IMG/VR virus record: IMGVR_UViG_3300033388_007730
Coordinates: 1 to 64,000 of that record
DNA length: 64,000 bases
Strand: one strand, 5' to 3'
The notes beneath the pieces were generated by a model that saw nothing but the letters and a program-made list of their open reading frames with translations, had not been told where the DNA came from and did not search any database. Both the position numbers and the translations under genes were made by a program. Every line of letters begins with the position of its first letter. The first letter of the stretch is position 1. Below, one piece after another: positions 46,511 to 63,703 of this stretch.

Positions 46511-46515
46511 AATTT

Positions 46516-46671: not shown

Positions 46672-46700
46672 ATTATTCCTCTGGGGTGAAGAAATAAATG

Positions 46701-46945
46701 TTAAAAATTCTCCTTATTAACTGTATCAATAATAAATTCTAAAATCTCATCTCTTCCTTCTAATATTGTTTCAACAACTTTTGTCCATTATCATTTTCGT
46801 GAACAACTCCTATGATATGTCCATAACCTCCATAGTGTCCTTTATCTGCGTGTTCTTGCATTTTCTCCGGACTTTCTATATCATTTGTTCCTAATCCGCT
46901 TGGATCGTACTAGCATCTTATAATTTGTCATTTTGATGTATCCAT
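46701..46945 (-). pseudogene. Disrupted small gene (two in-frame stops and a frameshift)
   Basis: MDTSK*QIIRC*YDPSGLGTNDIESPEKMQEHADKGHYGGYGHIIGVVHEND, then a shift to WTKVVETILEGRDEILEFIIDTVNKENF*. ATG overlaps the upstream stop (TAATG). Confidence 0.55.
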
Positions 46946-47239
46946 TAGTCTATCTCCATCAATTCAAATCTTGTAATTATTATTTCAGGTTCATTACTCA
47001 ATATTCTATTTATATTTACAATTTCTATTTCTTTTATAATATCTTCTGTTTTTTCATGAATTTTTATAATTTTTTTTACATTTTTTTTAGATTCTTTTAG
47101 TGTCATTTTTTTTTATTGTTGAATTATTCCTATCTCTAACAGACCATGTATCGTCTTTTGACATTTTAATGAAGTAGTCCCATCCATCTATAATTGTGTA
47201 ATTAAATTGATATCTTATTATATATTTTTTTTCGCTCAT
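46945..47239 (-). pseudogene. Small gene frameshifted at an A9 tract; C-terminus carries the RFELMEID tag
   Basis: MSEKKYIIRY...NNSTIKK, then a shift at 47106-47114 to MTLKESKK...EPEIIITRFELMEID*. Removing one A restores one ORF. Confidence 0.6.
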
Positions 47240-47565
47240 AATTCCATCAACTCAAATATAGATATAGGTTCTCTGTTTAGAAATTCTTTTTCTTCTCGCT
47301 CTTTTAGCTTTAACTTTGTTATATTTATTTGGCTACCATCTTTATTAAACTTATACCAACTTTCTTCACCATATAGATTTTTGTAATGTGCTTCTGTCCA
47401 TTTGTTTTCTTCATTGTATCCATATCAGGCTTCACGACCGATAGAATTTCTAACATGAATTAGATGACTATTCTTATTATACTTCCACCAGTATATTAGA
47501 TCATTAGGCTCTTCACGATAAATAAGATTCCCTTTTTCATCATGTTTTTCTATCTCTTCATTCAT
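47236..47565 (-). pseudogene. YD-like repeat protein with an in-frame TGA; C-terminal tag SIFELMEL
   Basis: MNEEIEKHDEKGNLIYRE...GREA*YGYNEEN...FLNREPISIFELMEL*. The TGA at 47425-47427 sits where paralog 49009 has W (EAWYKY). Confidence 0.75.
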
Positions 47566-47831
47566 ATGTCCATCAATCTAAATCTAGAAATTGGGTTCCT
47601 GCTTAAAAATTCTTTTTCTTGTTTTTTAAACTCTATTTCTTTTAATTTTTGTTCTGTTATTTCTATTGCCCAATTATCCTCACCATATTCCCACCATTGT
47701 TCTTCTCCTACAGAATTTTTCCAATGAATTATCCTATTGTTTTCGTCATATTCAGACCAATATTCATAGCCATTAGTTTTGAGATAAACACAATTGCCTT
47801 TATTATCATATTCTTCTATTGGTTCACTCAT
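47562..47831 (-). CDS. YD-like repeat protein with C-terminal tag SRFRLMDI
   Basis: EYDNKGN.VY...G.EYW.EYDENN repeats. Start placed at ATG 47831 because the GTG at 47849 lies inside the promoter. Confidence 0.8.
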   Translation of the reverse strand: MSEPIEEYDNKGNCVYLKTNGYEYWSEYDENNRIIHWKNSVGEEQWWEYGEDNWAIEITEQKLKEIEFKKQEKEFLSRNPISRFRLMDI

Positions 47832-47839
47832 AGTCTGCC

Positions 47840-47868
47840 ATTCTACCACAAAAATTGCTAAATGTCAA
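47840..47868 (-). promoter_or_regulatory. Near-consensus sigma70 promoter TTGACA-17-TAGAAT with extended -10
   Basis: -35 at 47863-47868, -10 at 47840-47845, 8 nt upstream of ATG 47831. Confidence 0.8.
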
Positions 47869-47877
47869 GAATAAATG

Positions 47878-47906
47878 TTGAAAAGTGATTATATTTGTTG
47901 TATTAT
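47878..47906 (+). promoter_or_regulatory. Sigma70-like promoter TTGAAA-17-TATTAT, divergent partner of the above
   Basis: Back-to-back with the minus-strand promoter; upstream of the AAGGGG RBS of 47933. Confidence 0.65.
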
Positions 47907-47932
47907 AGAAGATATTTCACAAAGGGGTTATT

Positions 47933-49012
47933 ATGAAACTGGGAATATTGTGTAATTTTGGTCCACCTTCAGTTGGAGGGTCGGAGTCCGTAATCAAAAA
48001 TATCTCTACACAGTTAATTAAGGGGTATAAGTACGAAATAAGTGTCTTTTCTTTCAATTATGATAGAATAAGTGTCTTTGAGGGTATGAACCTAATCCCT
48101 TGTCCAAAAGGGGAGAAATTGGTTCAAGAATTGAATAATTTTGACCATTTGATGGTCTACAGTGATGGTTTTTGGGAATGGGAGACAATTCTCAAGAATA
48201 TTGACAAAATCAAGCCAAATGTGACAATATCGATGGTTGGGATGTATCATATGATAGCAAATAACGAGCTATATGGCTTATTTAAAAAGAATATTGATAG
48301 GTATAGTATTATCACCCATTTTGAGGGGAATGATTATAATAAGTGCCTCTTTGACGGTCTAACGGTCAATGTGATACCTAATGGAGTTGATTTAGATGAG
48401 TTCAGAAATAATATTATAAATTTCCGCGAAAAATACAATATTAAAGAGAAATATGTCATTTTGAATTGTGCAAATTTTTTCTTCGGGAAAGGGCAAAATG
48501 CCCTTGGATTGATAAATAAAGAATTAAAAAAATATTTAAAAGATTTTATAATTGTTCAAATATCAAGTTCTATAAAGTATCCTTATGAACAAAGATTTTT
48601 AGAAAGAGCAAAGAGAAATTTTGATGGTGATAAGTGTTTGTTTTTAAGGAATATTCCCAGAGAAGATGTAGTAAGTGCATTCAAAGGCTCAGATATTTTT
48701 TTAAATGTTTCTGGGAAAGAAGTCAATCCTATTGTTATTCTTGAAAGTTTAGCTTCTGATTTGCCTTTTGTATCTTTATCAGTAGGAGATGTAAATAATT
48801 ATCCAGGAATAATAGTTAATACTGCCATAGAAGACAAAAAAGGATATAAGATAATAGATGAAAGAACTGTAAAAGTGTATGTAGATAGTATTATAAAACT
48901 TTTAACTAATAATGGGTTAAGAGAGGAGTTGATTATAAGGGGTCAAAATGTGATTGAGAAGTTAGATTGGAAGAATATTGTTCCAGAATATGATAAGGTG
49001 TTTAGAGGATGA
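47933..49012 (+). CDS. Glycosyltransferase family 4 (GT-B)
   Basis: PSVGGSE, VIPNGVD, GKGQ, EVNPIVILESLASDLPFV. Confidence 0.9.
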   Translation: MKLGILCNFGPPSVGGSESVIKNISTQLIKGYKYEISVFSFNYDRISVFEGMNLIPCPKGEKLVQELNNFDHLMVYSDGFWEWETILKNIDKIKPNVTISMVGMYHMIANNELYGLFKKNIDRYSIITHFEGNDYNKCLFDGLTVNVIPNGVDLDEFRNNIINFREKYNIKEKYVILNCANFFFGKGQNALGLINKELKKYLKDFIIVQISSSIKYPYEQRFLERAKRNFDGDKCLFLRNIPREDVVSAFKGSDIFLNVSGKEVNPIVILESLASDLPFVSLSVGDVNNYPGIIVNTAIEDKKGYKIIDERTVKVYVDSIIKLLTNNGLREELIIRGQNVIEKLDWKNIVPEYDKVFRG

Positions 49013-49239
49013 GCGTAATGAGAAGAGAATATGATGACAGAGGTAATACTATTTATAGAAGATTTATTAATGGTTTTGAAGCTTGGTATAAATATGATGA
49101 AAATAATCATTTAATATCTTCCATAAGTTCTCATAATAATATATATTGGTTTAGTCGAAAAATTGCAAAGGAAGAATTTGAGCAAATTAAATTCAATAAT
49201 AGAGAACCAATTTCTAGATTTGAGTTAATGGAATTATGA
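49009..49239 (+). CDS. YD-like repeat protein with C-terminal tag SRFELMEL
   Basis: EYDDRGNTIY...GFEAWYKYDENN; ATGA overlaps at both ends. Confidence 0.8.
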   Translation: MSVMRREYDDRGNTIYRRFINGFEAWYKYDENNHLISSISSHNNIYWFSRKIAKEEFEQIKFNNREPISRFELMEL

Positions 49240-49814
49240 AAAAATCATTAAAAAAAGAAATAAGATGGTTGATGTTTAAAATTGATCCTTTTAGGATTAA
49301 TTATTCAATAAAAAGATTTTCAAATAAAATGCATATGTACTATATTCTAAAAGATCACAAAGTTTCTGAAGATTTTATCAGAGAGTTTATGAGCAGAATA
49401 GGAGGACCAGAATGGAATATGCTATCTTCTAGTCAAGATTTGTCTGAAGATTTTATTAGAGAATTTCAGAGTAAGTTAGATTGGATGTAGATTTCTCTTT
49501 GTCAAAATTTATCAGAATCTTTTATTGTTGAATTTAAAGAAAAAATTCTTTGGAATTATGCTTCAGAAGGACAGGAACTCACTGAAGATTTTTTATTAGA
49601 GTATAGGGACAATCTTAATTACTATTGTCTGGTTAAGAATAAGAAGATCAAAGTCTCAAAAGAATTCAGGGAAATCATTAACAGAGTTAAATATGAAGAA
49701 TGGACAGATGTAGGGACAAATAATTGTGAGGTTATAAGGGAAAGATTAGGAGAGTATGAGCAAAAGAAGAGAGAAATGAATAAATATACTAGATTTGAGG
49801 TAATGGATTTATGA
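49236..49814 (+). pseudogene. Tryptophan-repeat (W..IS..Q.LSE.FI.EF) family protein with an in-frame TAG; C-terminal tag TRFEVMDL
   Basis: The frame continues past TAG 49488-49490 with more repeats (ISLCQNLSESFIVEF, WNYASEGQELTEDFLLEY) to TGA 49812-49814, which overlaps the next ATG. Confidence 0.8.
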
Positions 49815-50545
49815 GCACACCAATAGTAAGTGTTATTATGACTGTTTATAATTGTGAAAGATATATAGAAAAATCTTTACAATCAATTTCTGATCAAACT
49901 TTCAAAGATTTTGAAATTGTTATTTATGATGATTGCTCTACAGATAATACTGTTGAAATTATTACTGATTTTTTACGATATTATAAAGGTGATTATTATT
50001 TTATTTTTGGCGAAAAAAATGTTGGATGTGGAGAAAGTAGAAGCAAAGCGATAAGAAGGTCACATGGTAAATACCTGGCTATTCAAGATGCTGATGATAT
50101 CAGTCTTTCAAATAGATTAGAAAAAGAAGTCAACTTTTTAGAAGATAATAACGATATATTCTGTGTAGGAAGCTTTGTTATTAAGATTGATGAAGATGGA
50201 GAAGATGGTGAGAAAATAGAGTATCCACCTGAGAATAATGATGAAGTAATTAAAGCTATAACAGAAAAGTGTATGAATCCTATTTTAGATCCAAGCACAA
50301 TGTTCAGAAGAAAGGATTTTGATGAGATAGGAGGATATACTTCAGATAAGAGCATATGGACAGTTCCAGACTTTGATTTATGGCTTAGAGCACTATCAAC
50401 AGGAAAAAAGTTTTCTAATATCCAGGAATCATTAGTCAGATATAGAGTCAATGAAGAAGGAGTAACGAGGAAACATAAAGAAGAGATGATAAGACACCAT
50501 ATGATAGTATGGAATAGCTTTATGAAGGATAGGGGACTGAAATAG
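49811..50545 (+). CDS. Glycosyltransferase family 2
   Basis: VSVIMTVYN...YDDCSTD...GKYLAIQDADD...DFDLWLR. Confidence 0.92.
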   Translation: MSTPIVSVIMTVYNCERYIEKSLQSISDQTFKDFEIVIYDDCSTDNTVEIITDFLRYYKGDYYFIFGEKNVGCGESRSKAIRRSHGKYLAIQDADDISLSNRLEKEVNFLEDNNDIFCVGSFVIKIDEDGEDGEKIEYPPENNDEVIKAITEKCMNPILDPSTMFRRKDFDEIGGYTSDKSIWTVPDFDLWLRALSTGKKFSNIQESLVRYRVNEEGVTRKHKEEMIRHHMIVWNSFMKDRGLK

Positions 50546-50572
50546 AGGTTTTATTTTTTTTAATAAGAATAT
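50546..50572 (+). promoter_or_regulatory. Putative phage-type promoter AGG-N16-AAGAATAT
   Basis: Intergenic; same spacing as 6629 and 12876. Confidence 0.35.
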
Positions 50573-50602
50573 ATATAACAATGCTATATTAGGAGTGCAA
50601 CT

Positions 50603-51079
50603 ATGAAAGATTTACCACATTGGGTTAAGAAAATATTAAATAATGATAATTTAACATGCGGAGTATGCGATAAAGTAGTATCATTAAAAGATCTGTTTTC
50701 TATGGGTATTCAAAAAAGTAGTGTAAAACCGTTTAGGGAGGTTCTATTTATAGGAATTGTATGTAAGCATTGTAAAGAGATGACGCTTTTTGAGTTAAAA
50801 GAAATGACTTTACTTGATTTCGCTTTTGAAATATTGGAAGAACAATCAAAATCGCAAGCCAAAAGTAGTAAGAAAAAATTAGATAAAAAGATGAAAGTTA
50901 CTTCAAATGATAAAAATGTCAAAAAAACAAAAAGCAAGATAACTCTAAAAGAGATTAAAAACAGTGTATCGTTCCTCAATCAGATAGAAACACATGATGA
51001 TTTTTTGATTGCTCTTGGAATGTCAATAGAACAGATAGAAAGTTATAAGATTAAAAAGAATAAAAGAAAGACAAAATAA
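50603..51079 (+). CDS. Zinc-ribbon protein
   Basis: CGVC...CKHC; AGGAG RBS. Confidence 0.75.
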   Translation: MKDLPHWVKKILNNDNLTCGVCDKVVSLKDLFSMGIQKSSVKPFREVLFIGIVCKHCKEMTLFELKEMTLLDFAFEILEEQSKSQAKSSKKKLDKKMKVTSNDKNVKKTKSKITLKEIKNSVSFLNQIETHDDFLIALGMSIEQIESYKIKKNKRKTK

Positions 51080-52137
51080 TGAAAGTAAGTGATTTTAGAT
51101 TAGCAGCTTCGATATTAAAAAGGGTTTGTTTGAATAGTGGATTAGCATTCCAGGATGTGAATATCACTTTTGATGAGAATTCGACAGATAGTGCTTTTAT
51201 TATTGGTGGGACAAAGAATGTTGTTCATACTATATATAGAATAGTTGATAAGTATATTTCTAATTCTATTGATATATTTGGTCAAAAATTATTTCAGAGT
51301 CCAGAGGAAGAAGAGAATTTTTTATTAACTCTTGCTTCTAAATTAAGAACATTTTTATATCCTGACGATAGCATTTATGACAAAATTGAAGAAACTACTA
51401 AACAGAGTTTATATAGTATGCCATTAGTATGGATTTTAATGAAAGATATTGTATGTCCTATAAATGATGTCGCTCTTCAAAATATTGATATATTTTTAGT
51501 AGATAGAAATGATATAGACATAGCACAGTATTGTAGTGATGTTAAGAATATAAATAATATTGAATCTTCTTTCATATTCATTAATGATATAAGTAATAAT
51601 GCAGTTAAAAATGCACTACTGTTTATTGAAGTTCTGGAAGCACATGATTTATCACCAACAGAAGTTATTAAAGAGATATATGAAAGTGACTTATATGAGA
51701 AATTTTATGGATTATTAGAGCTTTCTTTGAATGATAGTGAAATAAATGATTTTGAAGGAATTTTGATAGATATTACTGGTATAGATTTATTTGATTTAAT
51801 CCCATATCAGATAGATGCTATAAGAGATCATAAGGTGGCACAAAGTACAAAATATGATACGCATGCAGGAATGCCATTCTGGTTTATGGGTCTTACTGAA
51901 GAGATGCTGGAACCTATGAGAGGTTCAAATTGGACAGTATATGAGGGATTACAGCCTTATGTAAAAGAATTTTGGGATAAAGTTGAAGAAGTTAAATCAA
52001 AAAGAATAAAAAAGGGTAAGGATGTGGGAGTTCCATTTAATATGTTATTGGGACTAAAAACAAAGCAACTAGATGGTGGAGAAACTGATACAGAAACTAC
52101 TCTTCAAGGATTGTTATCATCTAATAGAATATGGTAA
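51079..52137 (+). CDS. Hypothetical protein (352 aa)
   Basis: Long ORF with TAATG coupling. Confidence 0.75.
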   Translation: MKVSDFRLAASILKRVCLNSGLAFQDVNITFDENSTDSAFIIGGTKNVVHTIYRIVDKYISNSIDIFGQKLFQSPEEEENFLLTLASKLRTFLYPDDSIYDKIEETTKQSLYSMPLVWILMKDIVCPINDVALQNIDIFLVDRNDIDIAQYCSDVKNINNIESSFIFINDISNNAVKNALLFIEVLEAHDLSPTEVIKEIYESDLYEKFYGLLELSLNDSEINDFEGILIDITGIDLFDLIPYQIDAIRDHKVAQSTKYDTHAGMPFWFMGLTEEMLEPMRGSNWTVYEGLQPYVKEFWDKVEEVKSKRIKKGKDVGVPFNMLLGLKTKQLDGGETDTETTLQGLLSSNRIW

Positions 52138-52141
52138 TATC

Positions 52142-52170
52142 TTGAAAAGTGAAAGATAATGTTGTAAAAT
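52142..52170 (+). promoter_or_regulatory. Sigma70-like promoter TTGAAA-17-TAAAAT
   Basis: Shares TTGAAA(A)GTGA with the promoters at 44772 and 47878; followed by a GAGGTG RBS. Confidence 0.6.
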
Positions 52171-52182
52171 GTATGAGGTGAT

Positions 52183-52506
52183 ATGATGAATAATGAAGAA
52201 TATGAATTATTTCTTAATAAGACTTTGAACTTAATTGAAAATGCTGTTAATTTTTTAAATAGAGGTAAACATATTGTAGCATATAATAAGATGCTTGGAA
52301 TATACCAAAAATTAACATCATTGGAAGGGGACAAGAGGGTTGAATTATCATTGGAAGAATTGAGTTGTAGGTCTGTTTCTTATTATATGTTAGATGGTAG
52401 ATACGATGATGCGATGGTTGTTATTAAAAAAATAAGATTAGATTTATATCAAGTTTATGGTAAGGTAAAAAAAGAAAATGAAAAAAATAGAAACGAAAGC
52501 GTTTAA
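52183..52506 (+). CDS. Hypothetical helical protein (107 aa)
   Basis: GAGGTG RBS. Confidence 0.7.
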   Translation: MMNNEEYELFLNKTLNLIENAVNFLNRGKHIVAYNKMLGIYQKLTSLEGDKRVELSLEELSCRSVSYYMLDGRYDDAMVVIKKIRLDLYQVYGKVKKENEKNRNESV

Positions 52507-52657
52507 AAAAATATCAGCAGATGAAGTTACTCATCCACCAGTTCCAGGTGAGGGAGATGGTGCAAAATCTAAGAGTAGTGGTAAAAAGAAAAAGAAGAAA
52601 AAGTTACCTACATTGAATAGAGTAGTAGATGATGTAAGTATAAATGATTTAAGATAG
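52478..52657 (+). CDS. Small Lys-rich protein (59 aa), absent from the ORF track
   Basis: MKKIETKAFKKISADEVTHPPVPGEGDGAKSKSSGKKKKKKKLPTLNRVVDDVSINDLR; fills the gap before the helicase. Confidence 0.55.
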   Translation: MKKIETKAFKKISADEVTHPPVPGEGDGAKSKSSGKKKKKKKLPTLNRVVDDVSINDLR

Positions 52658-52667
52658 AGGAAGTATT

Positions 52668-54200: not shown

Positions 54201-54201
54201 G

Positions 54202-55125: not shown

Positions 55126-55135
55126 ACTATGAAAG

Positions 55136-55648
55136 ATGAAAATGAGTAAAGAGTATAGTATCAATTACAAGATTCAAGCTAGCATAGTTGATGTTGTGAC
55201 TCCAGAAGGAGAAATGAAAAAGAATGTATCATTCGATGATGCGATGGATATGACGGAAGAATATGGGTTGGACTTGGTAGAGGTTTCACCAACAAAAGAA
55301 AATAAAAATGCAGTATGTAAGATACTAGATTTTGGGAAATTAAAATATAAAGATAGTAAAAGGAAGAAGACTCACAAACAGGTTGTGAAAGAAATTAAGT
55401 TTAATTTTAATATCGATAACCACGATTTAGAAGTAAAAAATAAAAAAGTAAAAAAGTTCCTTGACAAAAAGTATCAGATAAGGTATAGTATAGAACTAAG
55501 AGGCAGAGAAAAATCGTTAATCTCTGCCGCGAGAGAAAAAATGGAAAAAAGTTTGGAACAGTTCAAAGAAGTAGCAAGTTGGACTCCTATCAAAGTTTTT
55601 TCTGGTGGAAGAATGGTAAGAATAACAACGGTTATATCTGCTGTATAA
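55136..55648 (+). CDS. infC: Translation initiation factor IF-3
   Basis: IN..I...V...G...A...GLDLVEVSP...VCKILDFGKLKY, VKEIKF...I..HD...K, RGRE. Confidence 0.92.
   Translation: MKMSKEYSINYKIQASIVDVVTPEGEMKKNVSFDDAMDMTEEYGLDLVEVSPTKENKNAVCKILDFGKLKYKDSKRKKTHKQVVKEIKFNFNIDNHDLEVKNKKVKKFLDKKYQIRYSIELRGREKSLISAAREKMEKSLEQFKEVASWTPIKVFSGGRMVRITTVISAV
55461..55489 (+). promoter_or_regulatory. Intragenic sigma70 promoter TTGACA-17-TATAGT, upstream of the AAA gene
   Basis: -35 at 55461-55466, -10 at 55484-55489. Confidence 0.55.
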
Positions 55649-55687
55649 ATGTGAAGTGTTTAATTAGATGTATGAAAGGAACCAGCA

Positions 55688-57346
55688 ATGGCAACAGAAG
55701 TATCAACGGAAGATAGTGAAAAAATCCTAGCGGAGATGACAACAGAAGAGTTTAAGACTGATTTCTCAACTATTTTGAGAACTCGTTATCCTCTTCTTTA
55801 TGTTAGTGTAAAAGAAGAAAGACGTTATCTCCGTTTCATGGAACATTTTTGCAGGGTGAATGGTTACGAATGCAAAATCTGGGATACATATAATGGCTTG
55901 ATCGATCTTGAGACAAAAGAGAAAGATGGTTCCATTTCAGATGACATGAAGAATGAGCCTATCGCTATTCTGGATCATGTCATAGCACAGGGCAAGATAT
56001 ATGTGAATAAGAAAGAGTCTGTTACAGACAAAAGAGCTCAAGGTATCAAGGGGATTATTTTTGTGCTTCTTGACTATTTCAGGTTTCTTGATGAGGCTCC
56101 TGATATTGAGAGAAGATTGAAAGCAATCTCCAGTCTTAATGGAATCGTAACTTGCATTCTCACAGGTCCGGATTATCTTGCTACGGATGTTATCGAAAAT
56201 TTGATGCCTAACATCGATTTTCCTTATGCTAACAAGAACGAGATAAAGACAGCACTGTATCAGGTTGTTGCTGGTGTCGATGATAAGCTTCCGGGGATTA
56301 AAAAGTCAACAAAAGCATTAGAGGAAGAGCTTATTAACTCTGTGCAGGGATTGACATTGATGGAAGCACAAACTGCTTTTTCAAAGTCTTTGGTTTCCAA
56401 AAGGGCATGGGACATACCAATTATCCTTAAGGAAAAGAAACAAATCATCAGAAAGAGTGGTATTCTTGAATACTATGATAGAACAGTTTCGATGGATGAT
56501 GTGGGTGGATTAAAGGAATTAATTGAGTGGATTAAACAAAGAAAGACCTGTTTCTCTCAAGAGGCAGAGGACTATGGGCTTAAGAAACCAAGAGGATTGC
56601 TTACTATTGGTATGCCAGGATGTGGTAAGTCCCTTGTCTGTAAGGCTATTAGTAGTTCATGGAATATGCCGTTGCTTAGGCTTGATTTCGGTAAGCTTTT
56701 TGGTTCGCTTGTCGGAGATTCCGAAAAGAACGCAAGAGAGGCTATTACTCAAGCTGAGGCTGTTGCTCCTGCTATTCTTTGGGTCGATGAAATCGAAAAA
56801 GCGATTTCAGGCGGAAGATCCAGTGGTCAAACTGACGGTGGGACTACTAGCAGAGTTCTTAGCACGTTTCTTACGTGGATGCAGGAAAAAGAGAGTCCGG
56901 TATTTGTGGTTGCAACGGCGAATGATCATGAGTCTATTCCTCCTGAGTTCTTGAGATCTGGACGTTTTGACGAGATTTTCTTTGTTGATCTTCCAAATTT
57001 AGATGAAAGAAAAGAAATCATTGAGGTTCATCTTAGGAAGAATGAGTTGAAAATCAAAAGTTTTGATATTGAAGCTATTGCTCAACACATTGAAGGGTAC
57101 AGCGGTGCAGAAATCGAAAAGTGTGTTGATTGTGCTATGCTCAGGGGCTTCGTAGAGAAAAAGAGAAAGATTAATACGCAGGATATCATTAAGGCATCGG
57201 GAGAGTTTGTACCGTTGTCAGTAATGAGAGAGGCTGATTTCGATGGTATTAAGGAATGGGCTTTGACGAGGTGTCGAAATGCTAGTTCGGGTCCTGTAGA
57301 AGTAGTTGATCTTGGAACTGATGGGAACAAAGATTTGGATATATAG
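55688..57346 (+). CDS. AAA+ ATPase, Ycf46-like
   Basis: Degenerate N-terminal module plus active AAA domain (VGGL..L..W, GMPGCGKS, WVDEIEK, SGRFDEIFFVDLP). Confidence 0.9.
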   Translation: MATEVSTEDSEKILAEMTTEEFKTDFSTILRTRYPLLYVSVKEERRYLRFMEHFCRVNGYECKIWDTYNGLIDLETKEKDGSISDDMKNEPIAILDHVIAQGKIYVNKKESVTDKRAQGIKGIIFVLLDYFRFLDEAPDIERRLKAISSLNGIVTCILTGPDYLATDVIENLMPNIDFPYANKNEIKTALYQVVAGVDDKLPGIKKSTKALEEELINSVQGLTLMEAQTAFSKSLVSKRAWDIPIILKEKKQIIRKSGILEYYDRTVSMDDVGGLKELIEWIKQRKTCFSQEAEDYGLKKPRGLLTIGMPGCGKSLVCKAISSSWNMPLLRLDFGKLFGSLVGDSEKNAREAITQAEAVAPAILWVDEIEKAISGGRSSGQTDGGTTSRVLSTFLTWMQEKESPVFVVATANDHESIPPEFLRSGRFDEIFFVDLPNLDERKEIIEVHLRKNELKIKSFDIEAIAQHIEGYSGAEIEKCVDCAMLRGFVEKKRKINTQDIIKASGEFVPLSVMREADFDGIKEWALTRCRNASSGPVEVVDLGTDGNKDLDI

Positions 57347-57347
57347 A

Positions 57348-58169: not shown

Positions 58170-58170
58170 T

Positions 58171-59706
58171 ATGAGTCAAAGTATCATTGATATAGAACAA
58201 CAGTTTATTTATCTTTTACTTCATGATAAGAAACTGGTTGGGGAATTTTTAGAAAGCATGTTGCTTTCTAAAGATTTTGATGAAAGTCATCAATTTATAT
58301 TAAAATGTATAATAGAGTGTTATGATGATGATGTTCTATTAACAAGAGATTCTCTTAGAAATAAAGCAAAGTCTAAAATACCTATTGAGAGAGTTGCATT
58401 AGAAACAACAATCAATAGGTGTTATAATGCACAAACAGATTCAAATAATTTTCCTACATTGGTCAATCAAATTTATGATCACAAGCTAGGAAAAGTTATT
58501 AATTTTGGTTTAGCGGAGTTTAATAAGAAACTTAAAGATGATAAATTTGAAGCTATTAAATATTTAGTGGAGAATTTTGAAAGCACTTTATACCAGAATA
58601 ATTCTTTTGCAAGTAAGACTTTTTATGATGATGTAACAATCATTTTTGATAAGAATATCCAATATTTAAAAGATGTTAGATCTGGTAAAATTGAAGAAAT
58701 TCCACCAATTATATGCGGGATAAAAGAAATAGATGATACAATGATAACCGGATATGAAGCTGGAACATTGACCTTATTTATCGCTGATGTTGGCGGATTT
58801 AAAAGCACAATGATGATGAATGTAGCTCTTAATGTATGGAGATATGGACATAATGTTCTTTATGTTCCGTTAGAAATGGATAAGGATCAAATGTGGAAGA
58901 GACTTTGTTCCAGAGAAAGTTGTATTCCTTATGAGATGTTTGCGAGAGATGTGAAAAGATTAACTGATGAACAGATGGAAAAGATAGAAGCTATTAAAGC
59001 AGAATTTGAAAGTGGAGAATCAAAATTCTATATAATGCAAGAATCTAAAAGAACTAATGTATTCACTATACAAAAGAATATAGAACGGAGAATTGAGGAA
59101 TTTAAACCAAAGCTAGTCGTAATTGATTACATAGCTAATTTAGATCCGGATCAGAAAAGAAATGGAAGAAATGATTTGGAAATAGGCGATATGCTCAAAT
59201 CTTTAAGACATAATGGTAAGACTCTTGGACATGCAGTCGTGTCAGGCGCTCAGCTTGGTCGTGCAGCTCTTAATAGGATTAGATTGGCAGGAAGGAATAG
59301 GGATAAGACAGCGATTAACTCAGAGGACGTGAGAGGTTCTCATGAATATTCTGCTGATGCTGATAATATTTATGCTCAGTTGAAACATGTTTCTCAACCA
59401 AATCAATTATTAGATATATATTGTGTTAAAGCTCGTAATGGGCCTAATACTTTTCCTAATGGAGAATTAAGAGCAACATTGGAAGTTCGTCCTGAGATAT
59501 TTTTAGTTCAGAGTCAAGGTCAGGGTGGGATGGGAGAAGTATCTACTGATGATATATTAAATGATTTAAATGATCTTGAAGAAGAGGATTCAGTTGTTGT
59601 TAAAAGTGATGTTGCAGAGGGAAGTTCTTCTGCTGCTGTTTCTACTGTTTCTACTGTTTCTACTGTTTCTATTGTTTCTGATGAAGAAGATGATTGGGAT
59701 TTCTAA
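58171..59706 (+). CDS. dnaB: Replicative DnaB-like helicase
   Basis: GI.EIDD..G...GTL...ADVGGFKS, VLYVPLEM, LVVIDY, AQLGR, KARNG; start at ATG 58171. Confidence 0.9.
   Translation: MSQSIIDIEQQFIYLLLHDKKLVGEFLESMLLSKDFDESHQFILKCIIECYDDDVLLTRDSLRNKAKSKIPIERVALETTINRCYNAQTDSNNFPTLVNQIYDHKLGKVINFGLAEFNKKLKDDKFEAIKYLVENFESTLYQNNSFASKTFYDDVTIIFDKNIQYLKDVRSGKIEEIPPIICGIKEIDDTMITGYEAGTLTLFIADVGGFKSTMMMNVALNVWRYGHNVLYVPLEMDKDQMWKRLCSRESCIPYEMFARDVKRLTDEQMEKIEAIKAEFESGESKFYIMQESKRTNVFTIQKNIERRIEEFKPKLVVIDYIANLDPDQKRNGRNDLEIGDMLKSLRHNGKTLGHAVVSGAQLGRAALNRIRLAGRNRDKTAINSEDVRGSHEYSADADNIYAQLKHVSQPNQLLDIYCVKARNGPNTFPNGELRATLEVRPEIFLVQSQGQGGMGEVSTDDILNDLNDLEEEDSVVVKSDVAEGSSSAAVSTVSTVSTVSIVSDEEDDWDF
59638..59679 (+). 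repeat. 9-bp tandem repeat (GTTTCTACT x3 plus variants) encoding VST repeats in the DnaB tail
   Basis: Read directly from the sequence. Confidence 0.9.
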
Positions 59707-59708
59707 TA

Positions 59709-60338
59709 ATGGAAAAAACAAAACATCCACTTATAGAAGCGATTTTAAAAGAGAAAAAGATAACAGATTTTTTAGAATCCAGGGGAATACATCCTACTCG
59801 CAAGAGTGGTGATAGGCTGGTATATCTATGCCCAATTCATAAGGGAGATAGTATTCCTTCATTCATTGTGTCTAATGATAGGAAAGAGTATCAAACTTAT
59901 AAGTGTTTTGGATGTCATTCAGGTAATGATATAATAAATTTAGTATGTGATCTGGATAATGTATCTATTAAACAAGCAATTAGAATATTGTCTAAGGGCA
60001 TAAGTGTTGAACAAGGGGATATAACTGATTCTTTTGTTAGTGAATCTGCTAAAATTATTGAAAGGGAATTGAAGGATTCTAAAGAATTAGAAATATCTAT
60101 GTTAAAAACAGGTGTTTTTTGTAGAGATCATTTAAGTAAATGGTACGATGAAGAAGAGGTTGAATTTTGTCTTAATATGTATAAAATATTAGATAAGGTT
60201 ATTAGACTTAATGATATTGAAGACTTAGAAAGAATGTATAAAATATTATGTGAAAAAGGTTTTCCGGAAAGAAGGAAATTTTGTCTGGAAAGAAAAGAGA
60301 AGAGAATTTTGAATAAGGTTAAAGCATGGAAAATATAG
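59709..60338 (+). CDS. Primase-type CHC2 zinc-finger protein without a catalytic TOPRIM domain
   Basis: LCPIH..D..PSF.V...YKCFGC...D.I.LV; only about 209 aa. Confidence 0.85.
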   Translation: MEKTKHPLIEAILKEKKITDFLESRGIHPTRKSGDRLVYLCPIHKGDSIPSFIVSNDRKEYQTYKCFGCHSGNDIINLVCDLDNVSIKQAIRILSKGISVEQGDITDSFVSESAKIIERELKDSKELEISMLKTGVFCRDHLSKWYDEEEVEFCLNMYKILDKVIRLNDIEDLERMYKILCEKGFPERRKFCLERKEKRILNKVKAWKI

Positions 60339-60745
60339 AAATAAGAATAGATTTTTCAGACATTACTTTATCTGAGACAGATGGAGTATATGAAGATGTT
60401 AAAAAGATAATGGCAGAAGAAAATATTAATTATGACAAGTGGGTTCTTAGAAGTGATATAACTATTATGAGTCCTAGCGGAGTGGGTTCTATGGAAATTC
60501 AATGTCATGGAGATGGTAGCGTACATATTTTAAAATATGTTCCATCAATAGCTGATGTATTTTATAATAATGATATCCAGGCTATTTCTTCATGGGCACA
60601 AGAAAATGGATGGAAAATTCCTCAACCAAAATATACATTAGTGGAAGATAATAAACAATTTTGGAAATATTTCTGGGATACATTGGTAATTGATAGCGAT
60701 TATCTCGATAAGTTATATGGGAAGAGGGAACAATTAGGAGCTTAA
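60326..60745 (+). CDS. Hypothetical protein (139 aa)
   Basis: Lies in the operon; AAGG RBS. Confidence 0.7.
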   Translation: MENIEIRIDFSDITLSETDGVYEDVKKIMAEENINYDKWVLRSDITIMSPSGVGSMEIQCHGDGSVHILKYVPSIADVFYNNDIQAISSWAQENGWKIPQPKYTLVEDNKQFWKYFWDTLVIDSDYLDKLYGKREQLGA

Positions 60746-60746
60746 G

Positions 60747-61090
60747 ATGATAAAAAAAGAAGTTGAAGTTGTAAAAAAACTAGTTTATCAAGATGTTGTG
60801 ATAAATGTCATGTCAAAATATATGAAGTGCAAAGCAGTGCTTTTCAGTATCCAGGAACATTTTGTAAAATGTGTAAAATTGATTTATGCAAGATACATAG
60901 GAATGAAGATCCTACATTAGAGGAATATGAAAGAAAAAAAACTGAAGAAATTTATTGTGATGATTGTTTTAGAATTGTAGAAAAACCTCTATATAAATTA
61001 AAAGAGTTGAAAGAAGAATATGATCAGAAGGTTCAGGTAATACGTTTAAAAATGAGAAGAGAATGTGATAAATTAAAGGAAGAGAAATGA
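60747..61090 (+). CDS. Cys-rich zinc-finger protein requiring a -1 shift at the A7 tract (60773-60779)
   Basis: AGGAG-ATG at 60747 (MIKKEVEVVKK). The -1 frame gives TSLSRCCDKC...CKMC...C..H...CDDC, in frame with track ORF 60827. Confidence 0.55.
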
Positions 61091-62073
61091 GTAATCTTGC
61101 GATATTTTGTGGTTCAGCAAATCCGGAGTTGGTAAAAGGAATTTGTGATTCAATTGGTGTTCAAATGAGAAATGCTAAAATATCTCATTTCCCAGATGGA
61201 GAGACAATGGTGAAAGTTGAAAATGATGTAAGAGGAAATGATTGTTTCATTATACAATCTACATCTCCACCAGTTAATGAGAATATTATGGAATTATTAA
61301 TTTATATTGATTGCTTGAAGAGAGCATCTGCTAAGAGTATTACTGCCGTGATACCTTATTTTGGATATGCTCGACAGGACAGAAAAGCAGAAGGTAGAAC
61401 ACCTATTACTGCTAGAATGGTGGCTGATCTCTTGTCCCAATCTGGAATAAATAGAGTTCTTACAATAGATTTACATGCTAAACAGATAGAAGGATTTTTT
61501 AACATACCAGTTGATCATCTTACAGCAAGACCTGTTTTTATGAAGTATCTTAAATCTTGGGATATGACAGATACTGTTGTATTGTCTCCTGATGTTGGGA
61601 ATATGAAAATAGCTAATGATTACGCACAAGAGTTGGGTACTGACATTGCGGTTATAGATAAAAGAAGAGTGAATGGAGAGAAAGTAGAGTCTTCTACTAT
61701 TGTTGGAAATGTATCAGGTAAATCTGTATTGATATTTGATGATATGATATCAACTGCTGGAACAATTGTTGCCGCAACTGAACTGGCTAAGAAAAAAGGG
61801 TGTGTAAGAGTCTCTGTAGTTGCTACTCATGGATTATTTTGTGGTGGCGCGATAGAAAAAATAACAGAATCCTGTATCGACACAATCATCGTTTCTGACA
61901 CAATACCGTTGAATAAGGCGATGAAAGATATGATAGAAAGTGGAAATAATGAAAAATTTCCAAAAATAAAAATAATTTCTCTTGCAAAATTGCTAGGAGA
62001 GGCTATAATACGTATATATGATGAAAGATCAATAAGCGTATTGTTAGAAAGTGATTATGATTTTGGTGTGTAA
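61087..62073 (+). CDS. prs: Ribose-phosphate pyrophosphokinase (PRPP synthetase)
   Basis: FPDGE, DVRG, PYFGYARQDRK, DLHA.QI.GFF, SPDVG, DKRR, DDMISTAGT, ATHG. Confidence 0.97.
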   Translation: MSNLAIFCGSANPELVKGICDSIGVQMRNAKISHFPDGETMVKVENDVRGNDCFIIQSTSPPVNENIMELLIYIDCLKRASAKSITAVIPYFGYARQDRKAEGRTPITARMVADLLSQSGINRVLTIDLHAKQIEGFFNIPVDHLTARPVFMKYLKSWDMTDTVVLSPDVGNMKIANDYAQELGTDIAVIDKRRVNGEKVESSTIVGNVSGKSVLIFDDMISTAGTIVAATELAKKKGCVRVSVVATHGLFCGGAIEKITESCIDTIIVSDTIPLNKAMKDMIESGNNEKFPKIKIISLAKLLGEAIIRIYDERSISVLLESDYDFGV

Positions 62074-62094
62074 TAATATATAAGGAGGCAGAAA

Positions 62095-62685
62095 ATGTCT
62101 ATAGAAGAAAAAAAGAAACCATTGGAGTTTATTTTCACTCCAGATAATGTTCCTGGACCTATAGGCTCAGGGGATTATGAAATAGTTTATAATCCAGATT
62201 ACCAATCTAGTGGTAGTATTATGGATTTGTATCCACTCAACATAACCAACAGTGGACAAAGTATTTGTTGCCCAATTGAGTTATTTACTGAGGTGATTGA
62301 TTTTTTAACAGAGAAAGGAATTATAGAGGGGAAGGTAAAGGAAACGAATCTTGTTCAGACTAAAATTATTTCTACAATTCCATTACCAGTTATAGATGGT
62401 GTTGGTGAGACAGTTCTTGGTCAAGAAGGTTCATCTTCTGTACAACCTTTTACATCTTTTGATGAGACTGATACTGAAATGAATGATATATTGACACCTG
62501 ATGATGAGTCTGTTAAAGATGTAGCATCTATAAAAGTTGGAGATAAAGAAGCAGCTTCTGAAGAAATTGTTTCTAGACCAGTAATACGAACTAGAGTTGG
62601 TGATAGTGAAGATCCTCAACAGGCAGAGAAAGATGCTGCTGTTATGAGGGGTAATGCAGAAAGTAATTTTAGAAGGACTGATTAA
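62095..62685 (+). CDS. Hypothetical acidic protein (196 aa)
   Basis: AAGGAGG RBS. Confidence 0.75.
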   Translation: MSIEEKKKPLEFIFTPDNVPGPIGSGDYEIVYNPDYQSSGSIMDLYPLNITNSGQSICCPIELFTEVIDFLTEKGIIEGKVKETNLVQTKIISTIPLPVIDGVGETVLGQEGSSSVQPFTSFDETDTEMNDILTPDDESVKDVASIKVGDKEAASEEIVSRPVIRTRVGDSEDPQQAEKDAAVMRGNAESNFRRTD

Positions 62686-62900
62686 TGGAGTACAAATGTA
62701 CGACAGTTCCTATTAATAAACTTATTTCTACGCCATCTGGCTTTGTAATGCCAATGTGTCAAGAATGTAAAACAATTGATTGTGATAATCCAATAGAGTC
62801 TAAGAATATTAGTGTACTAGGCGTTAATAAAAATATAAAAGTGTTCGTAAGAGGAACCCAAATTTCTTTTGTTGTTAATTGTAATGGATACACAAAATGA
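62685..62900 (+). CDS. Small Cys-rich protein
   Basis: C...CQEC...C...C; coupled on both sides. Confidence 0.65.
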   Translation: MEYKCTTVPINKLISTPSGFVMPMCQECKTIDCDNPIESKNISVLGVNKNIKVFVRGTQISFVVNCNGYTK

Positions 62901-63703
62901 GTGCAAGAATTAGTAAAGCTAGACAAACAAGTAGAATTGGAAAGCAAAGAGAAAAAAAACAAGATGAATTCTCTAAGCATCAAAAAAGTATGGCTAAAAT
63001 TAAAGCGAGTCCTAATACTCAAAAGATAAGTTATCCCATATATAAGGAGGCTTATGAATATGTGGATAATTTGTTTCCAGGTTCTGAAGTAAAGAAAGTT
63101 GGTATCTATAAAGTGAGTCCTACTTATCTCACTAAATTGGGATATGGTGGTTGCGGTGGTTTTTATTGTAGGTACTCGAAGGTGATTGTAATTTCATCCT
63201 GGTTTCCAGTGGATAAAAGAAGATATCCATCTAGATATAATTTTAGTATCAAAGCTAAAATAACTAAAGATGAAGTGATAGCACATGAATTGCTTCATTA
63301 TTGTTTTGTAGAAGAGGGTGGCAATTCTAATAGTAGAGAAATAAATGAAGAGTTTGCTTATGGTTGGTCAATTGGATATTTAAGATTTAAAGGACATTCA
63401 GACGATTTTATTATAACAAAGAATTTTTATCCATTCTTGGTAGAGATTATGTCTAAACAGGCTTTAGATTATGTTTTACATTTGGATGGTAGTACCAGAG
63501 CTGAATATAATAAATTTTCTAAATTCAAGCAAAGGGAATTTTTTAGAAAATATGGAATAAAATGGCATAATAAAAGAAAAGAATTAGCATATGAATATGG
63601 GGAAGATCTCATTGAGTTATATGATAGAAAAGCATCAGAGGGAACTCACTGCACTAAAGAAGTTACAAAAACTGACCGATTTGATCTAATGGATCTAGAT
63701 TAG
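62897..63703 (+). CDS. Putative zincin metallopeptidase-domain protein with C-terminal tag DRFDLMDLD
   Basis: GGFY strand, VIAHELLHY (HExxH) and downstream NEEFAY (third ligand E). Confidence 0.7.
   Translation: MSARISKARQTSRIGKQREKKQDEFSKHQKSMAKIKASPNTQKISYPIYKEAYEYVDNLFPGSEVKKVGIYKVSPTYLTKLGYGGCGGFYCRYSKVIVISSWFPVDKRRYPSRYNFSIKAKITKDEVIAHELLHYCFVEEGGNSNSREINEEFAYGWSIGYLRFKGHSDDFIITKNFYPFLVEIMSKQALDYVLHLDGSTRAEYNKFSKFKQREFFRKYGIKWHNKRKELAYEYGEDLIELYDRKASEGTHCTKEVTKTDRFDLMDLD

What the first reader, a model, noticed from the sequence alone, without database searches (positions are those of the whole stretch)
46945..63703. Shared C-terminal peptide tag (RF-E-LM-D/E-L/I) on six ORFs from at least four unrelated families: candidate undescribed protein-targeting system
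Seen: the C-termini are ITRFELMEID* (46945, -), ISIFELMEL* (47236, -), ISRFRLMDI* (47562, -), ISRFELMEL* (49009), YTRFEVMDL* (49236-49814) and TDRFDLMDLD* (62897). The bodies are three YD-like repeat proteins, a Trp-repeat protein, an unrelated small protein and an HExxH peptidase 14 kb away. Three copies are invisible in the ORF track because those genes are disrupted. The motif always ends at the stop, usually after a charged linker. Copy 6 uses synonymous codons (CGA vs AGA, CTA vs TTA/TTG) and has no downstream overlap, which argues for protein-level selection. In the other five the stop overlaps the next ATG (ATGA/TAATG), so the DNA (..AGATTTGARTTRATGGAnnTATGA) could also supply a GGA SD core and a short homology for cassette shuffling. 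Inference: a portable docking signal, for example for capsid packaging/ejection, a phage AAA ATPase or protease, or a hub protein. I do not recognise a described family.
Basis: partly seen in the sequence, partly recalled or inferred. Interest (0 to 1): 0.88.

Follow-up and report, generated by a model that had tools for sequence, protein, structure and literature searches.

The report
Portable C-terminal docking tag, huge phages
A seven-to-twelve residue peptide (…S/D/N-R-F-E/D-I/L-L/M-D-L/I-stop) is attached to the C-termini of dozens of unrelated small proteins and one conserved metalloprotease in a group of uncultivated marine huge phages, which looks like a new address or docking label whose receptor is still unknown.

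Summary
A regular expression for the motif hits exactly six places in all six frames of the 64-kb window, and each lies 1-2 residues before a stop. The six ORFs belong to four unrelated families.

The motif is not local to this window. The window is the first 64 kb of a 219-kb IMG/VR contig. In related huge-phage contigs (100-548 kb) the same tail ends at least 75 ORFs, which fall into 52 sequence-unrelated clusters. In a 50-kb stretch of a relative that was not picked for tags, 17 of 93 called genes carry it.

Selection acts on the protein. The HExxH protein (tag 6) has 85 homologs down to about 25% identity. Almost all keep the tail after a variable, flexible linker, with conservative substitutions and different codons.

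Among the small ORFs the tag DNA also shows common descent or gene conversion: Leu codons are almost only TTR and GAG is over-used. 38 of 81 tags overlap the next start codon.

No Pfam, PHROG, PDB or literature match describes the motif. The closest analogue is the interchangeable hydrophobic-acidic C-terminal clamp-binding epitope of T4/RB69 gp43, gp33 and gp55. The phage DnaE polymerase lacks the tag, and no clamp gene was found.

Best reading: a portable docking or address peptide for one shared receptor. The receptor is undetermined.

The parts
46945..47106 (-). Tag 1 gene: 53-aa orphan ORF ending …EPEIIITRFELMEID*. Tag core at 46948-46971. It may be joined by a frameshift at the T10 run (about 47107-47116) to the 50-aa ORF at 47087-47239.
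   Evidence: no homolog of either piece
47236..47565 (-). Tag 2 gene: YD-like mini-protein ending …REPISIFELMEL*. It is interrupted by an in-frame TGA at 47425-47427 that aligns with Trp of intact paralogs. The stop overlaps the start of the next ORF (ATGA).
47562..47849 (-). Tag 3 gene: intact YD-like mini-protein (89-95 aa) ending …RNPISRFRLMDI*. The stop overlaps the start of the tag 2 gene.
49009..49239 (+). Tag 4 gene: intact YD-like mini-protein (76 aa) ending …REPISRFELMEL*. It is translationally coupled on both sides, to the glycosyltransferase at 47933-49012 and to the tag 5 gene.
49236..49814 (+). Tag 5 gene: SEDFIREF-type repeat protein (about 192 aa) ending …NKYTRFEVMDL*. It is interrupted by an in-frame TAG at 49488-49490. 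An intact tagged homolog is at L105 11464-12018. Phage G gp556 is an untagged homolog.
62897..63703 (+). Tag 6 gene: conserved 268-aa HExxH zincin (HELLHY…EEFAY) ending …KTDRFDLMDLD*. It is the last gene of a conserved, translationally coupled trio (62095-62685, 62685-62900, 62897-63703) in the replisome module.
63728..64000 (+). Gene that runs off the window end. Its 171-aa ortholog in the relative ends …NEFDRFDILDFD*, so this is probably a seventh tagged gene.
55688..57346 (+). Cdc48/p97-like tandem AAA ATPase with a degenerate D1 and an active D2. It has its own conserved C-terminal tail [KR][DEN][LI]D[LI]* (here …NKDLDI*). It is a candidate partner or fellow client. No link to the tag was shown.

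Best explanation
The tail is a portable short linear motif. Its core is [SDNT]-R-[FYW]-[EDSG]-[ILMV]-[LM]-[DE]-[LIF], placed at or within 0-4 residues of the C-terminus. In the larger genomes an E-P-I precedes it. A variable Glu/Lys/Pro-rich linker separates it from the body.

It works as a docking or address peptide. Many unrelated body domains carry it: Zn-ribbon minis, repeat proteins, one membrane-anchored family, and a conserved HExxH zincin. A flexible leash tethers each of them to one shared receptor surface. This is how the T4/RB69 clamp-binding epitope, the SspB ClpX-tethering tail and encapsulin cargo-loading peptides work.

Shown:
- strict C-terminal position;
- portability across at least 52 unrelated families;
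- protein-level purifying selection;
- a flexible, undocked tail in the AF2 model;
- a clade-specific 'flavour' that the vertically inherited HExxH gene shares.

Inferred:
- that a single receptor exists;
- that it lies in the cytoplasm, from the N-terminal TM plus Lys-rich topology of one tagged family.

The receptor's identity is open. My ranking is: a destination label such as virion or compartment loading, about 0.3; a sliding-clamp-like replisome hub, about 0.2; tethering to an AAA+ unfoldase/protease, about 0.2; another host hub, about 0.15.

Among the small ORFs the tag-coding DNA has also spread or been homogenised as a DNA module, and it often holds the next gene's start codon.
For: - Window: 6 of 6 motif hits are terminal and none is internal.
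- IMG/VR scan: the real hits concentrate in huge-phage contigs, for example more than 20 in the 548-kb contig.
- In the loci there are 75 terminal against 9 internal matches in 317,802 ORF residues. The 75 bodies form 52 BLAST clusters, and 46 scanned tagged proteins gave almost no Pfam or PHROG hits.
- Sample not chosen for tags: 17 of 93 called genes in 50 kb of the 387-kb relative are tagged.
- HExxH family: 85 homologs, 25-90% identical. The tail is retained with F/Y/W, L/I/M/F and D/E swaps after a linker of variable sequence and length. The codons differ: CGA/AGA, CTA/CTC/CTG/TTA.
- AF2: body pLDDT is above 90 and the last 19 residues score 52-57, with a short helix over RFDL.
- Flavour: the 548-, 351- and 298-kb contigs use (E)PIx[SND]RFEILDL, while the window contig and its 387-kb relative use RFELMD[LI]. 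The HExxH tail shifts the same way, RFDLLDL against RFDLMDLD.
- The same body occurs without the tag (phage G gp556). Fused double-tag proteins exist.
- 43 of 81 tags have no overlapping downstream start.
- A bacterial genome scan found no cellular proteins that end in the tag.
- Literal and conceptual literature searches found no description.
Against: - No receptor was identified, and no binding was or could be tested.
- No cultured phage has the HExxH homolog, so no proteomic or genetic data exist.
- The flavour co-variation rests on essentially one split between two clades.
- Small-ORF tags show nucleotide-level constraint. Leu at position -3 is TTR in 53 of 54 cases against 64% in the bodies, and GAG is 65-77% against 29%. 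Part of their uniformity is therefore shared descent or gene conversion and not independent selection.
- The loci used for the 75:9 count were picked through the tag itself.
Confidence: 0.65

Rival explanations
1. Sliding-clamp-binding epitope. The tag tethers proteins to a phage or host sliding clamp, as the tails of T4 gp43, gp33 and gp55 do, so the clamp becomes a tool-belt for many small DNA-transaction factors and for an SprT/Spartan-like protease.
For: - The RB69 gp43 tail (KKASLFDMFDF*) fits the tag pattern S-x-F-[DE]-h-h-D-h-COOH at every constrained position. The T4 gp43, T4 gp33 and RB69 gp55 tails (SLDFLFG*, TLDFLL*, SLDFLYEDDN*) share the h-D-h-h core.
- The T4 literature describes a short hydrophobic-acidic C-terminal epitope after a divergent linker of variable length. 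It is freely interchangeable between proteins and still works when internal (PMC2988020).
- The only core tagged gene lies between primase and DnaE.
- Its weak best fold hits are SprT-like and IrrE-like zincins.
Against: - The clade's polymerase (DnaE) does not carry the tag. Its tails (…GADIFG*, …ESMDLFG*) resemble the T4 polymerase tail or the bacterial clamp-binding motif instead, and they lack the invariant Arg and the D-L end.
- No clamp or clamp-loader Pfam hit appeared in the 50 kb of the relative that came with precomputed Pfam annotation. No clamp was recognised in the scanned proteins of the window either.
- About 20% of accessory genes are tagged, including a membrane-anchored family, which is far more than any known clamp clientele in phages.
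Confidence: 0.2
2. Proteolysis or unfoldase tether. The tag is a degron, or an SspB-like adaptor tail, that brings the tagged proteins or their bound host targets to the phage Cdc48-like AAA ATPase and the tagged HExxH protease.
For: - A Cdc48/p97-like AAA ATPase and the HExxH zincin are both conserved in the same module throughout the clade.
- The ATPase has its own conserved tail [KR][DE]LDL*, which matches the last residues of the tag. Mycobacteriophage Dylan gp95 ends RVLDL*.
- The body-linker-tail architecture equals that of SspB (my knowledge).
- Repeat and Zn-ribbon bodies are typical binder scaffolds.
Against: - The ATPase family occurs widely in phages that lack the HExxH protein. Dylan, the one such genome checked, has no other tagged protein.
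- The ATPase always sits next to a loader-like gene and DnaB, which suggests a replication role.
- The AF2 model aligns end to end with p97 D1-D2 and has no separate adaptor-binding N domain. Its own tail is not docked (pLDDT 48-62).
- No ClpP-, HslV- or 20S-type partner was seen.
Confidence: 0.2
3. Cargo or compartment address label. The tag loads proteins into the prohead for co-ejection, or into another phage-built compartment, like encapsulin cargo-loading peptides, the T4 capsid-targeting sequence or PTS1.
For: - The share of tagged genes (about 18% in 50 kb) is typical of sorting signals and not of hub motifs.
- The architecture (C-terminal, after a flexible linker, on unrelated small proteins) equals that of encapsulin cargo-loading peptides (my knowledge).
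- Huge capsids are known to carry many small proteins (my knowledge).
Against: - None of the large structural proteins at 1-44.7 kb is tagged.
- Tagged genes lie among replication and metabolic genes.
- One tagged family is membrane-anchored.
- No virion proteome exists for this clade.
Confidence: 0.25
4. DNA/RNA-level element only. The conserved 21-24 nt serve as Shine-Dalgarno sequence plus overlapping start for the next gene, or as a short homology for cassette shuffling, and the peptide is a by-product.
For: - 38 of 81 tagged ORFs overlap a downstream start, and TGA stops are enriched.
- In small ORFs, Leu codons are nearly all TTR and Glu is GAG at 65-77% against 29% background.
- In the large genomes the tag DNA is a triple heptamer, AGATTTN x3.
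- Tagged mini-genes sit between the two halves of a split DnaE in the relative.
Against: - 43 of 81 tags have no coupled downstream gene.
- The HExxH tail is conserved over 85 homologs with different codons and conservative amino-acid replacements, and it has no overlapping gene.
- Third positions vary freely: ATT 28/ATA 27, TTA 32/TTG 22, GAT 61/GAC 18.
- The motif occurs in one reading frame only and only at ORF ends.
Confidence: 0.07

Closest known systems
T4/RB69 sliding-clamp-binding epitope (C-termini of gp43, gp33, gp55)
   Same: Both are short hydrophobic-acidic peptides at the extreme C-terminus, placed after a divergent flexible linker on unrelated proteins. The T4 epitope is interchangeable between proteins and tolerates a few extra residues or an internal position. 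RB69 gp43 (SLFDMFDF*) matches the tag's pattern of hydrophobic and acidic positions.
   Different: The invariant Arg and the D-[LI] end of the tag are absent from the T4 motif. The replicative polymerase here (DnaE) has a different tail. No clamp gene was found. The number of tagged proteins is tens per genome, against three or four in T4.
Bacterial beta-clamp-binding motif QL[SD]LF
   Same: Both are pentapeptide-scale motifs, often C-terminal. The third position is small or acidic (S/D/G), as in the HExxH-family variants RFSILDL and RYGMLDL.
   Different: Gln is replaced by an invariant Arg, and the tag continues with D-[LI]. The DnaE tails of the same phages (…SMDLFG*) fit the clamp-binding motif better than the tag does.
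SspB XB tail / ssrA-type C-terminal degrons (ClpX) and p97 adaptor motifs (SHP, VIM; Wss1/Spartan)
   Same: A body domain, a flexible linker and a short terminal peptide tether cargo or a protease to an AAA+ machine. A Cdc48-like ATPase and a tagged zincin are both encoded here.
   Different: The sequences are not similar. The phage ATPase model lacks an adaptor-binding N domain. No link between ATPase and tag was shown.
Encapsulin cargo-loading peptides, T4 capsid-targeting sequence, PTS1
   Same: A short terminal label on many unrelated proteins directs them to one proteinaceous compartment or receptor. The high fraction of labelled genes fits this class.
   Different: The sequences are not similar. 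The T4 capsid-targeting sequence is N-terminal and is cleaved off. No evidence places the tagged proteins in virions.
Poxvirus ankyrin-PRANC (F-box-like) proteins
   Same: Viral multigene families combine variable binder bodies with a constant C-terminal module that plugs into one host machine.
   Different: PRANC is a folded domain of about 50 residues and not a 7-12 residue motif. It belongs to a eukaryotic system.

Membership tests
T4-type sliding-clamp-binding epitope | Short hydrophobic-acidic C-terminal peptide after a variable, flexible linker | tested here: met
   Tail logos, variable linkers in 78 aligned HExxH homologs, tail pLDDT 52-57, and comparison with the RB69 and T4 tails.
T4-type sliding-clamp-binding epitope | The phage's replicative polymerase carries the same epitope as the other clients | tested here: not met
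   The DnaE C-termini are …GADIFG* (L072) and …ESMDLFG* (L114). The N-terminal half of the split DnaE ends …EDDFSG*. None carries the tag.
T4-type sliding-clamp-binding epitope | The genome encodes a sliding clamp and clamp loader | tested here: inconclusive
   No clamp or clamp-loader hit appeared in the scanned proteins of the window or in 50 kb of the 387-kb relative.
T4-type sliding-clamp-binding epitope | The peptide binds the clamp's hydrophobic pocket | not testable with these tools
   No complex prediction or binding assay was available.
Bacterial beta-clamp-binding motif (QL[SD]LF) | Conserved Gln at position 1 and L-F or L-x-L at positions 4-5(6) | tested here: not met
   Position 1 is Arg or Lys in 83 of 83 tags. 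The core is F-x-h-h-D-h.
Encapsulin-type cargo-loading peptide / capsid-targeting signal | Tagged proteins are found inside the shell or virion, and the tag binds the shell interior | not testable with these tools
   There is no cultured relative and no proteome. No structural protein in the window is tagged.
C-terminal degron / AAA+ adaptor tail | A cognate unfoldase with a tag- or adaptor-binding domain co-occurs specifically with the tag | tested here: inconclusive
   All four tag-rich contigs encode the AAA ATPase. The family is far wider than the tag, and the model shows no N-terminal adaptor domain.
Translational-coupling / RBS element | The conserved sequence always lies just upstream of or across a downstream start codon, and conservation is at the nucleotide level | tested here: not met
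   43 of 81 tags have no coupled gene. The HExxH tail is conserved with different codons. A partial nucleotide bias exists in the small ORFs.
PDZ class II ligand (h-x-h-COOH) | A free carboxylate on the terminal hydrophobic residue is required | tested here: not met
   11 of 83 tags carry 1-4 extra residues (…LMDLD*, …ILDLSYG*, …FLDIREE*).
M78 (ImmA/IrrE) or SprT-like zincin (for the tag 6 body) | Significant sequence or fold match to the family | tested here: inconclusive
   Pfam M78: E = 0.16, below the cut-off. PDB profile search: nothing. Foldseek best hits: IrrE 3dti at E = 0.57 and phage SprT-like proteins at E = 0.07. HExxH, plus a downstream Glu, is invariant in the 78 aligned homologs.

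The most novel reading that the evidence does not exclude
A clade of marine huge phages encodes a general protein-addressing system. One C-terminal label sits on about a fifth of their accessory proteins, roughly 50-100 or more per genome. It directs these proteins to a single phage-built destination, either the prohead for co-ejection as a pre-made host-takeover and anti-defence arsenal, or another compartment. The conserved tagged HExxH protease travels with them. This would be a prokaryotic-virus counterpart of PTS1 or encapsulin cargo loading.
Probability: 0.3. Interest if true: 0.9.

Novelty: new variant of a known kind. Interest (0 to 1): 0.74.

Why it matters
- Portable terminal docking peptides are rare in phage biology. 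The T4 clamp epitope is the classic case, with three or four clients. Here one motif marks dozens of otherwise unannotatable small proteins per genome.
- The motif therefore gives a first functional handle on a large part of huge-phage dark matter. All tagged proteins presumably meet at one receptor.
- Finding that receptor would reveal a new organising principle of huge-phage infection: cargo loading, a replisome tool-belt or targeted proteolysis.
- The tag could also be used as a short transferable targeting peptide.
- It is directly testable with a synthetic peptide.

Tried and rejected
- Pfam, PHROGs and NCBIfam scans of all tagged pieces, of neighbouring genes and of 46 tagged proteins from relatives gave essentially no families.
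- A tblastn of the HExxH protein against 50,697 phage records found no match.
- A profile of the last 30 residues of 76 tags, searched against 1.84 billion representatives, was too short to be useful. It returned only two double-tag fusion proteins.
- A homology search with the tag 3 protein found only the protein itself.
- ESM Atlas look-ups of the protein downstream of DnaE and of the 71-aa trio member were uninformative.
- A scan of bacterial genomes with the tag DNA found only short non-coding low-complexity repeats of AGATTTN, mostly in cyanobacteria and Bacteroidota, and no cellular tagged proteins.
- No tmRNA or tRNA was found in the window or in 20 tag-rich loci, so the tag is not a phage tmRNA tag and there is no suppressor tRNA.
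- Stop-codon reassignment was rejected as the cause of the in-frame TGA and TAG. ORFs of 2,000 aa are intact in code 11, and both TGA and TAG terminate conserved genes here.
- The sequencing-run look-up found only diverged marine-metagenome relatives, so the in-frame stops and the homopolymer could not be verified from reads.
- I tested whether the AAA ATPase docks its own tail, or has a p97-like N domain, as a sign of a tail-binding site. The AF2 model shows neither.
- Walking 50 kb along the 387-kb relative to find a clamp, ClpP or another hub found none.
- Mycobacteriophage Dylan has the same ATPase family, with a tail RVLDL*. No other Dylan protein carries the tail, although gp114 (…DRFLMLELTKETV*) is a possible weak echo.

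Full report
**What the window is.**
- The window is 31% G+C and has no tRNAs.
- Positions 1-44.7 kb encode giant structural proteins of up to 2,006 aa.
- Positions 44.8-50.5 kb hold three glycosyltransferases interleaved with small ORFs.
- Positions 50.6-64 kb form a replication module. It contains an SNF2-type helicase, an IF3 homolog, a Cdc48-like AAA ATPase, a degenerate loader-like protein, DnaB, a primase Zn-ribbon and a PRPP synthetase.
- The AAA ATPase gene is 100% identical to, and at the same coordinate as, IMG/VR contig 3300033388_007730 (219,188 bp). The window is therefore that contig's first 64 kb.
- No cultured phage is close. Public runs that hold related sequence are marine metagenomes.

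**The observation.**
- A regex for the core motif hits six places in all six frames, and each lies 1-2 residues before a stop. Looser patterns add no credible further copies.
- Tags 2, 3 and 4 end paralogs of one YD-like mini-protein family. Tag 5 ends a SEDFIREF-type repeat protein. Tag 1 ends an orphan 53-aa ORF. Tag 6 ends a 268-aa HExxH protein.
- The tag 2 gene carries an in-frame TGA that aligns with Trp of intact paralogs. The tag 5 gene carries an in-frame TAG that aligns with Ser of an intact 184-aa homolog, which also ends in the tag. These look like simple nonsense mutations in fast-evolving accessory genes.
- Reads that could confirm the stops were not available.
- The stops of tags 2-5 overlap the next gene's ATG. 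Tags 1 and 6 do not overlap a real gene.

**Distribution beyond the window.**
- A degenerate DNA pattern for the tag was scanned over IMG/VR and returned 69 loci.
- Chance matches were tiny out-of-frame ORFs. Real matches clustered in a few huge-phage contigs of 548, 351, 298 and 219 kb.
- Over all ORFs of at least 50 aa in these loci, a looser protein pattern found 75 copies within 3 residues of the C-terminus and 9 internal copies in 317,802 residues.
- With the last 14 residues removed, the 75 proteins fall into 52 BLAST clusters. They include many Zn-ribbon minis, an 'MKYKVGDKVKIK' family and a family with an N-terminal transmembrane helix followed by a Lys-rich stretch. That topology places the tag in the cytoplasm.
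- Pfam and PHROGs recognise almost none of them.
- A 9.9-kb locus of the 548-kb contig carries more than 20 tagged genes in tandem, plus a paralog family with the variant …NRSEILDLG….
- For an estimate not biased by the tag, I walked 50 kb along the 387-kb relative (ENA BAEC19-1 scaffold_14), starting from the HExxH ortholog. Seventeen of 93 called genes end in the tag.
- A scan of 185,579 bacterial and archaeal genomes found only non-coding low-complexity DNA of similar sequence and no cellular proteins with the tail.

**Protein-level versus DNA-level selection.**
- The HExxH protein has 85 homologs (25-90% identity) on contigs of up to 387 kb.
- Apart from truncated entries, almost all end in a recognisable variant such as RFDILDL, RFSILDL, RYGMLDL, GFSFLDLD or KFGMMDFGF. 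The 10-20 residues before the tail vary freely in sequence and length.
- Where DNA is available, the tail uses CGA or AGA for Arg and CTA, CTC, CTG or TTA for Leu.
- The AF2 model of this protein is confident (pLDDT 90.8). The last 19 residues score 52-57 and form at most one helical turn over RFDL. This describes a free linear motif and not part of the fold.
- Among the small ORFs, third codon positions vary: ATT 28/ATA 27, TTA 32/TTG 22, GAT 61/GAC 18.
- Other synonymous choices are not free. Leu at position -3 is TTR in 53 of 54 cases, against 64% in the bodies of the same genes. Glu is GAG in 65-77% of cases against 29%.
- In the large genomes the tag DNA reads as three heptamers, AGATTTN.
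- 38 of 81 tagged ORFs hold an overlapping downstream start, and 43 do not.
- My reading is that the peptide is the selected object. Among the mini-genes the tag has also spread or been homogenised as a DNA module, and it doubles as a junction for translational coupling.

**Clade-specific flavour.**
- The 548-, 351- and 298-kb contigs use (E)-P-I-x-[SND]-R-F-E-I-L-D-L.
- The window contig and its 387-kb relative use [TDS]-R-F-E-L-M-D-[LI].
- The vertically inherited HExxH gene has codons that differ from the small-ORF tags, so it has not been converted by them. It shows the same shift, RFDLMDLD against RFDLLDL/RFDILDL.
- This is what co-evolution with one shared receptor predicts. It is effectively a single phylogenetic contrast, so it is suggestive only.

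**Search for the receptor.**
- *Sliding clamp.*
  - RB69 gp43 ends KKASLFDMFDF*. T4 gp43 ends SLDFLFG*, T4 gp33 ends TLDFLL* and RB69 gp55 ends SLDFLYEDDN*.
  - The RB69 tail matches the tag's hydrophobic-acidic pattern position by position.
  - The T4 literature describes exactly this architecture and its interchangeability (PMC2988020).
  - Against this, the polymerase of this clade is a DnaE whose tail (…GADIFG*, …ESMDLFG*) is not the tag.
  - No clamp or clamp loader appeared in the sequence I could annotate.
- *AAA ATPase.*
  - The protein is a classic-clade AAA (phmmer 2e-63 to Cdc48). Its AF2 model aligns end to end with p97, Cdc48 and AFG2 D1-D2 at a TM-score of about 0.65. It is therefore a tandem AAA with a degenerate first domain and no separate adaptor-binding N domain.
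  - About 100 homologs keep a C-terminal tail [KR][DEN][LI]D[LI]* after a variable linker. A 31%-identical mycobacteriophage protein ends RVLDL*. This tail resembles the last residues of the tag.
  - The ATPase family and its conserved neighbourhood (ATPase, loader-like gene, DnaB) extend far beyond the tag-bearing clade. Its own tail is not docked in the model.
- *HExxH protein.*
  - It is a novel minimal zincin. The invariant residues include HExxH and a downstream EE.AY.
  - Only insignificant fold hits were found, to IrrE, thermolysin and phage SprT-like proteins.
  - It is the last gene of a conserved, translationally coupled trio that lies between primase and DnaE.
- *Capsid.* No structural protein in the window is tagged, and no proteome exists.
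- The receptor therefore remains open.

**Conclusion.**
- The finding is a genuine, widespread and undescribed C-terminal short linear motif. It is portable across dozens of unrelated protein families in a clade of uncultivated marine huge phages.
- The mechanism I commit to is docking of many bodies to one shared receptor through a flexible C-terminal leash (confidence 0.65).
- The identity of the receptor decides whether this is a cargo or compartment address label, a clamp-type tool-belt motif or a proteolysis tether. It could not be determined with the available tools.
- A synthetic peptide or a genome-wide co-folding screen can answer this directly.

Noticed in passing
window 55688-57346; homologs P0086-P0205; L119 (Dylan gp95): The Cdc48-like AAA ATPase family keeps its own C-terminal motif [KR][DEN][LI]D[LI]* after a variable linker in about 100 homologs. 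The mycobacteriophage Dylan homolog ends RVLDL*, and more distant ones end DEEL*. The motif looks like a second, older terminal motif that shares the L-D-L end with the tag.
   Followed up: partly
window 59680-59706 (DnaB end), 62050-62073 (PRPP synthetase end); L114 17889-18557; L118 11157-11828: Several replication-module proteins share a distinct class of acidic-aromatic C-terminal tails. DnaB ends …DEEDDWDF*, PRPP synthetase ends …ESDYDFGV*, and the SSB-like proteins end …SDDLPF* and …NEDFNPDW*. These recall the T7 gp4 and gp2.5 tails and the bacterial SSB tip.
   Followed up: no
L072 14644-19076; L114 11843-16045: In the 387-kb relative, DnaE (Pol III alpha) is split into 466-aa and 656-aa genes with four mini-genes between them, three of them tagged. 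A 129-kb relative has an intact DnaE that carries an intein with a LAGLIDADG endonuclease, and its AAA ATPase is also interrupted by an intein.
   Followed up: partly
window 47425-47427 and 49488-49490; T10 run at about 47107-47116: There is an in-frame TGA (aligned with Trp) and an in-frame TAG (aligned with Ser) in two tagged genes, and a homopolymer at a possible frameshift in a third. These could be decay of accessory genes or assembly error. Reads to decide were not available.
   Followed up: partly
L036, L057 and other loci of the 548-kb contig; L121-L199: In the large genomes the tag DNA is a triple heptamer (AGATTTG AGATTTT AGATTTA). The same low-complexity DNA occurs as short non-coding repeats in many cyanobacterial and Bacteroidota genomes.
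   Followed up: partly
P0206, P0207 (protein representatives): These are natural fusions of two tagged mini-proteins. Each carries one internal and one terminal copy of the tag, as expected if the stop between two array members is lost.
   Followed up: no
window 55136-55648; L201 10989-16347: The phage encodes an IF3 homolog next to the ATPase. The relative also encodes NeuB, a CMP-sugar synthetase and MptE-like genes (nonulosonic-acid pathway), a peptide deformylase, an acyl carrier protein and SpoVS. This matches the three glycosyltransferases in the window.
   Followed up: no
window 62095-62900: Two genes without any annotation (196 aa with an acidic disordered tail, and a 71-aa Cys-rich protein) are translationally coupled to the HExxH gene. 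They are conserved with it across the clade and may be its partners.
   Followed up: partly
window 45513-47849: This is the only leftward-transcribed block in the window, marked by reversed GC and AT skew at 46-48 kb. It holds tags 1-3 and sits between the structural module and a glycosyltransferase, so it looks like an inserted cassette cluster.
   Followed up: no
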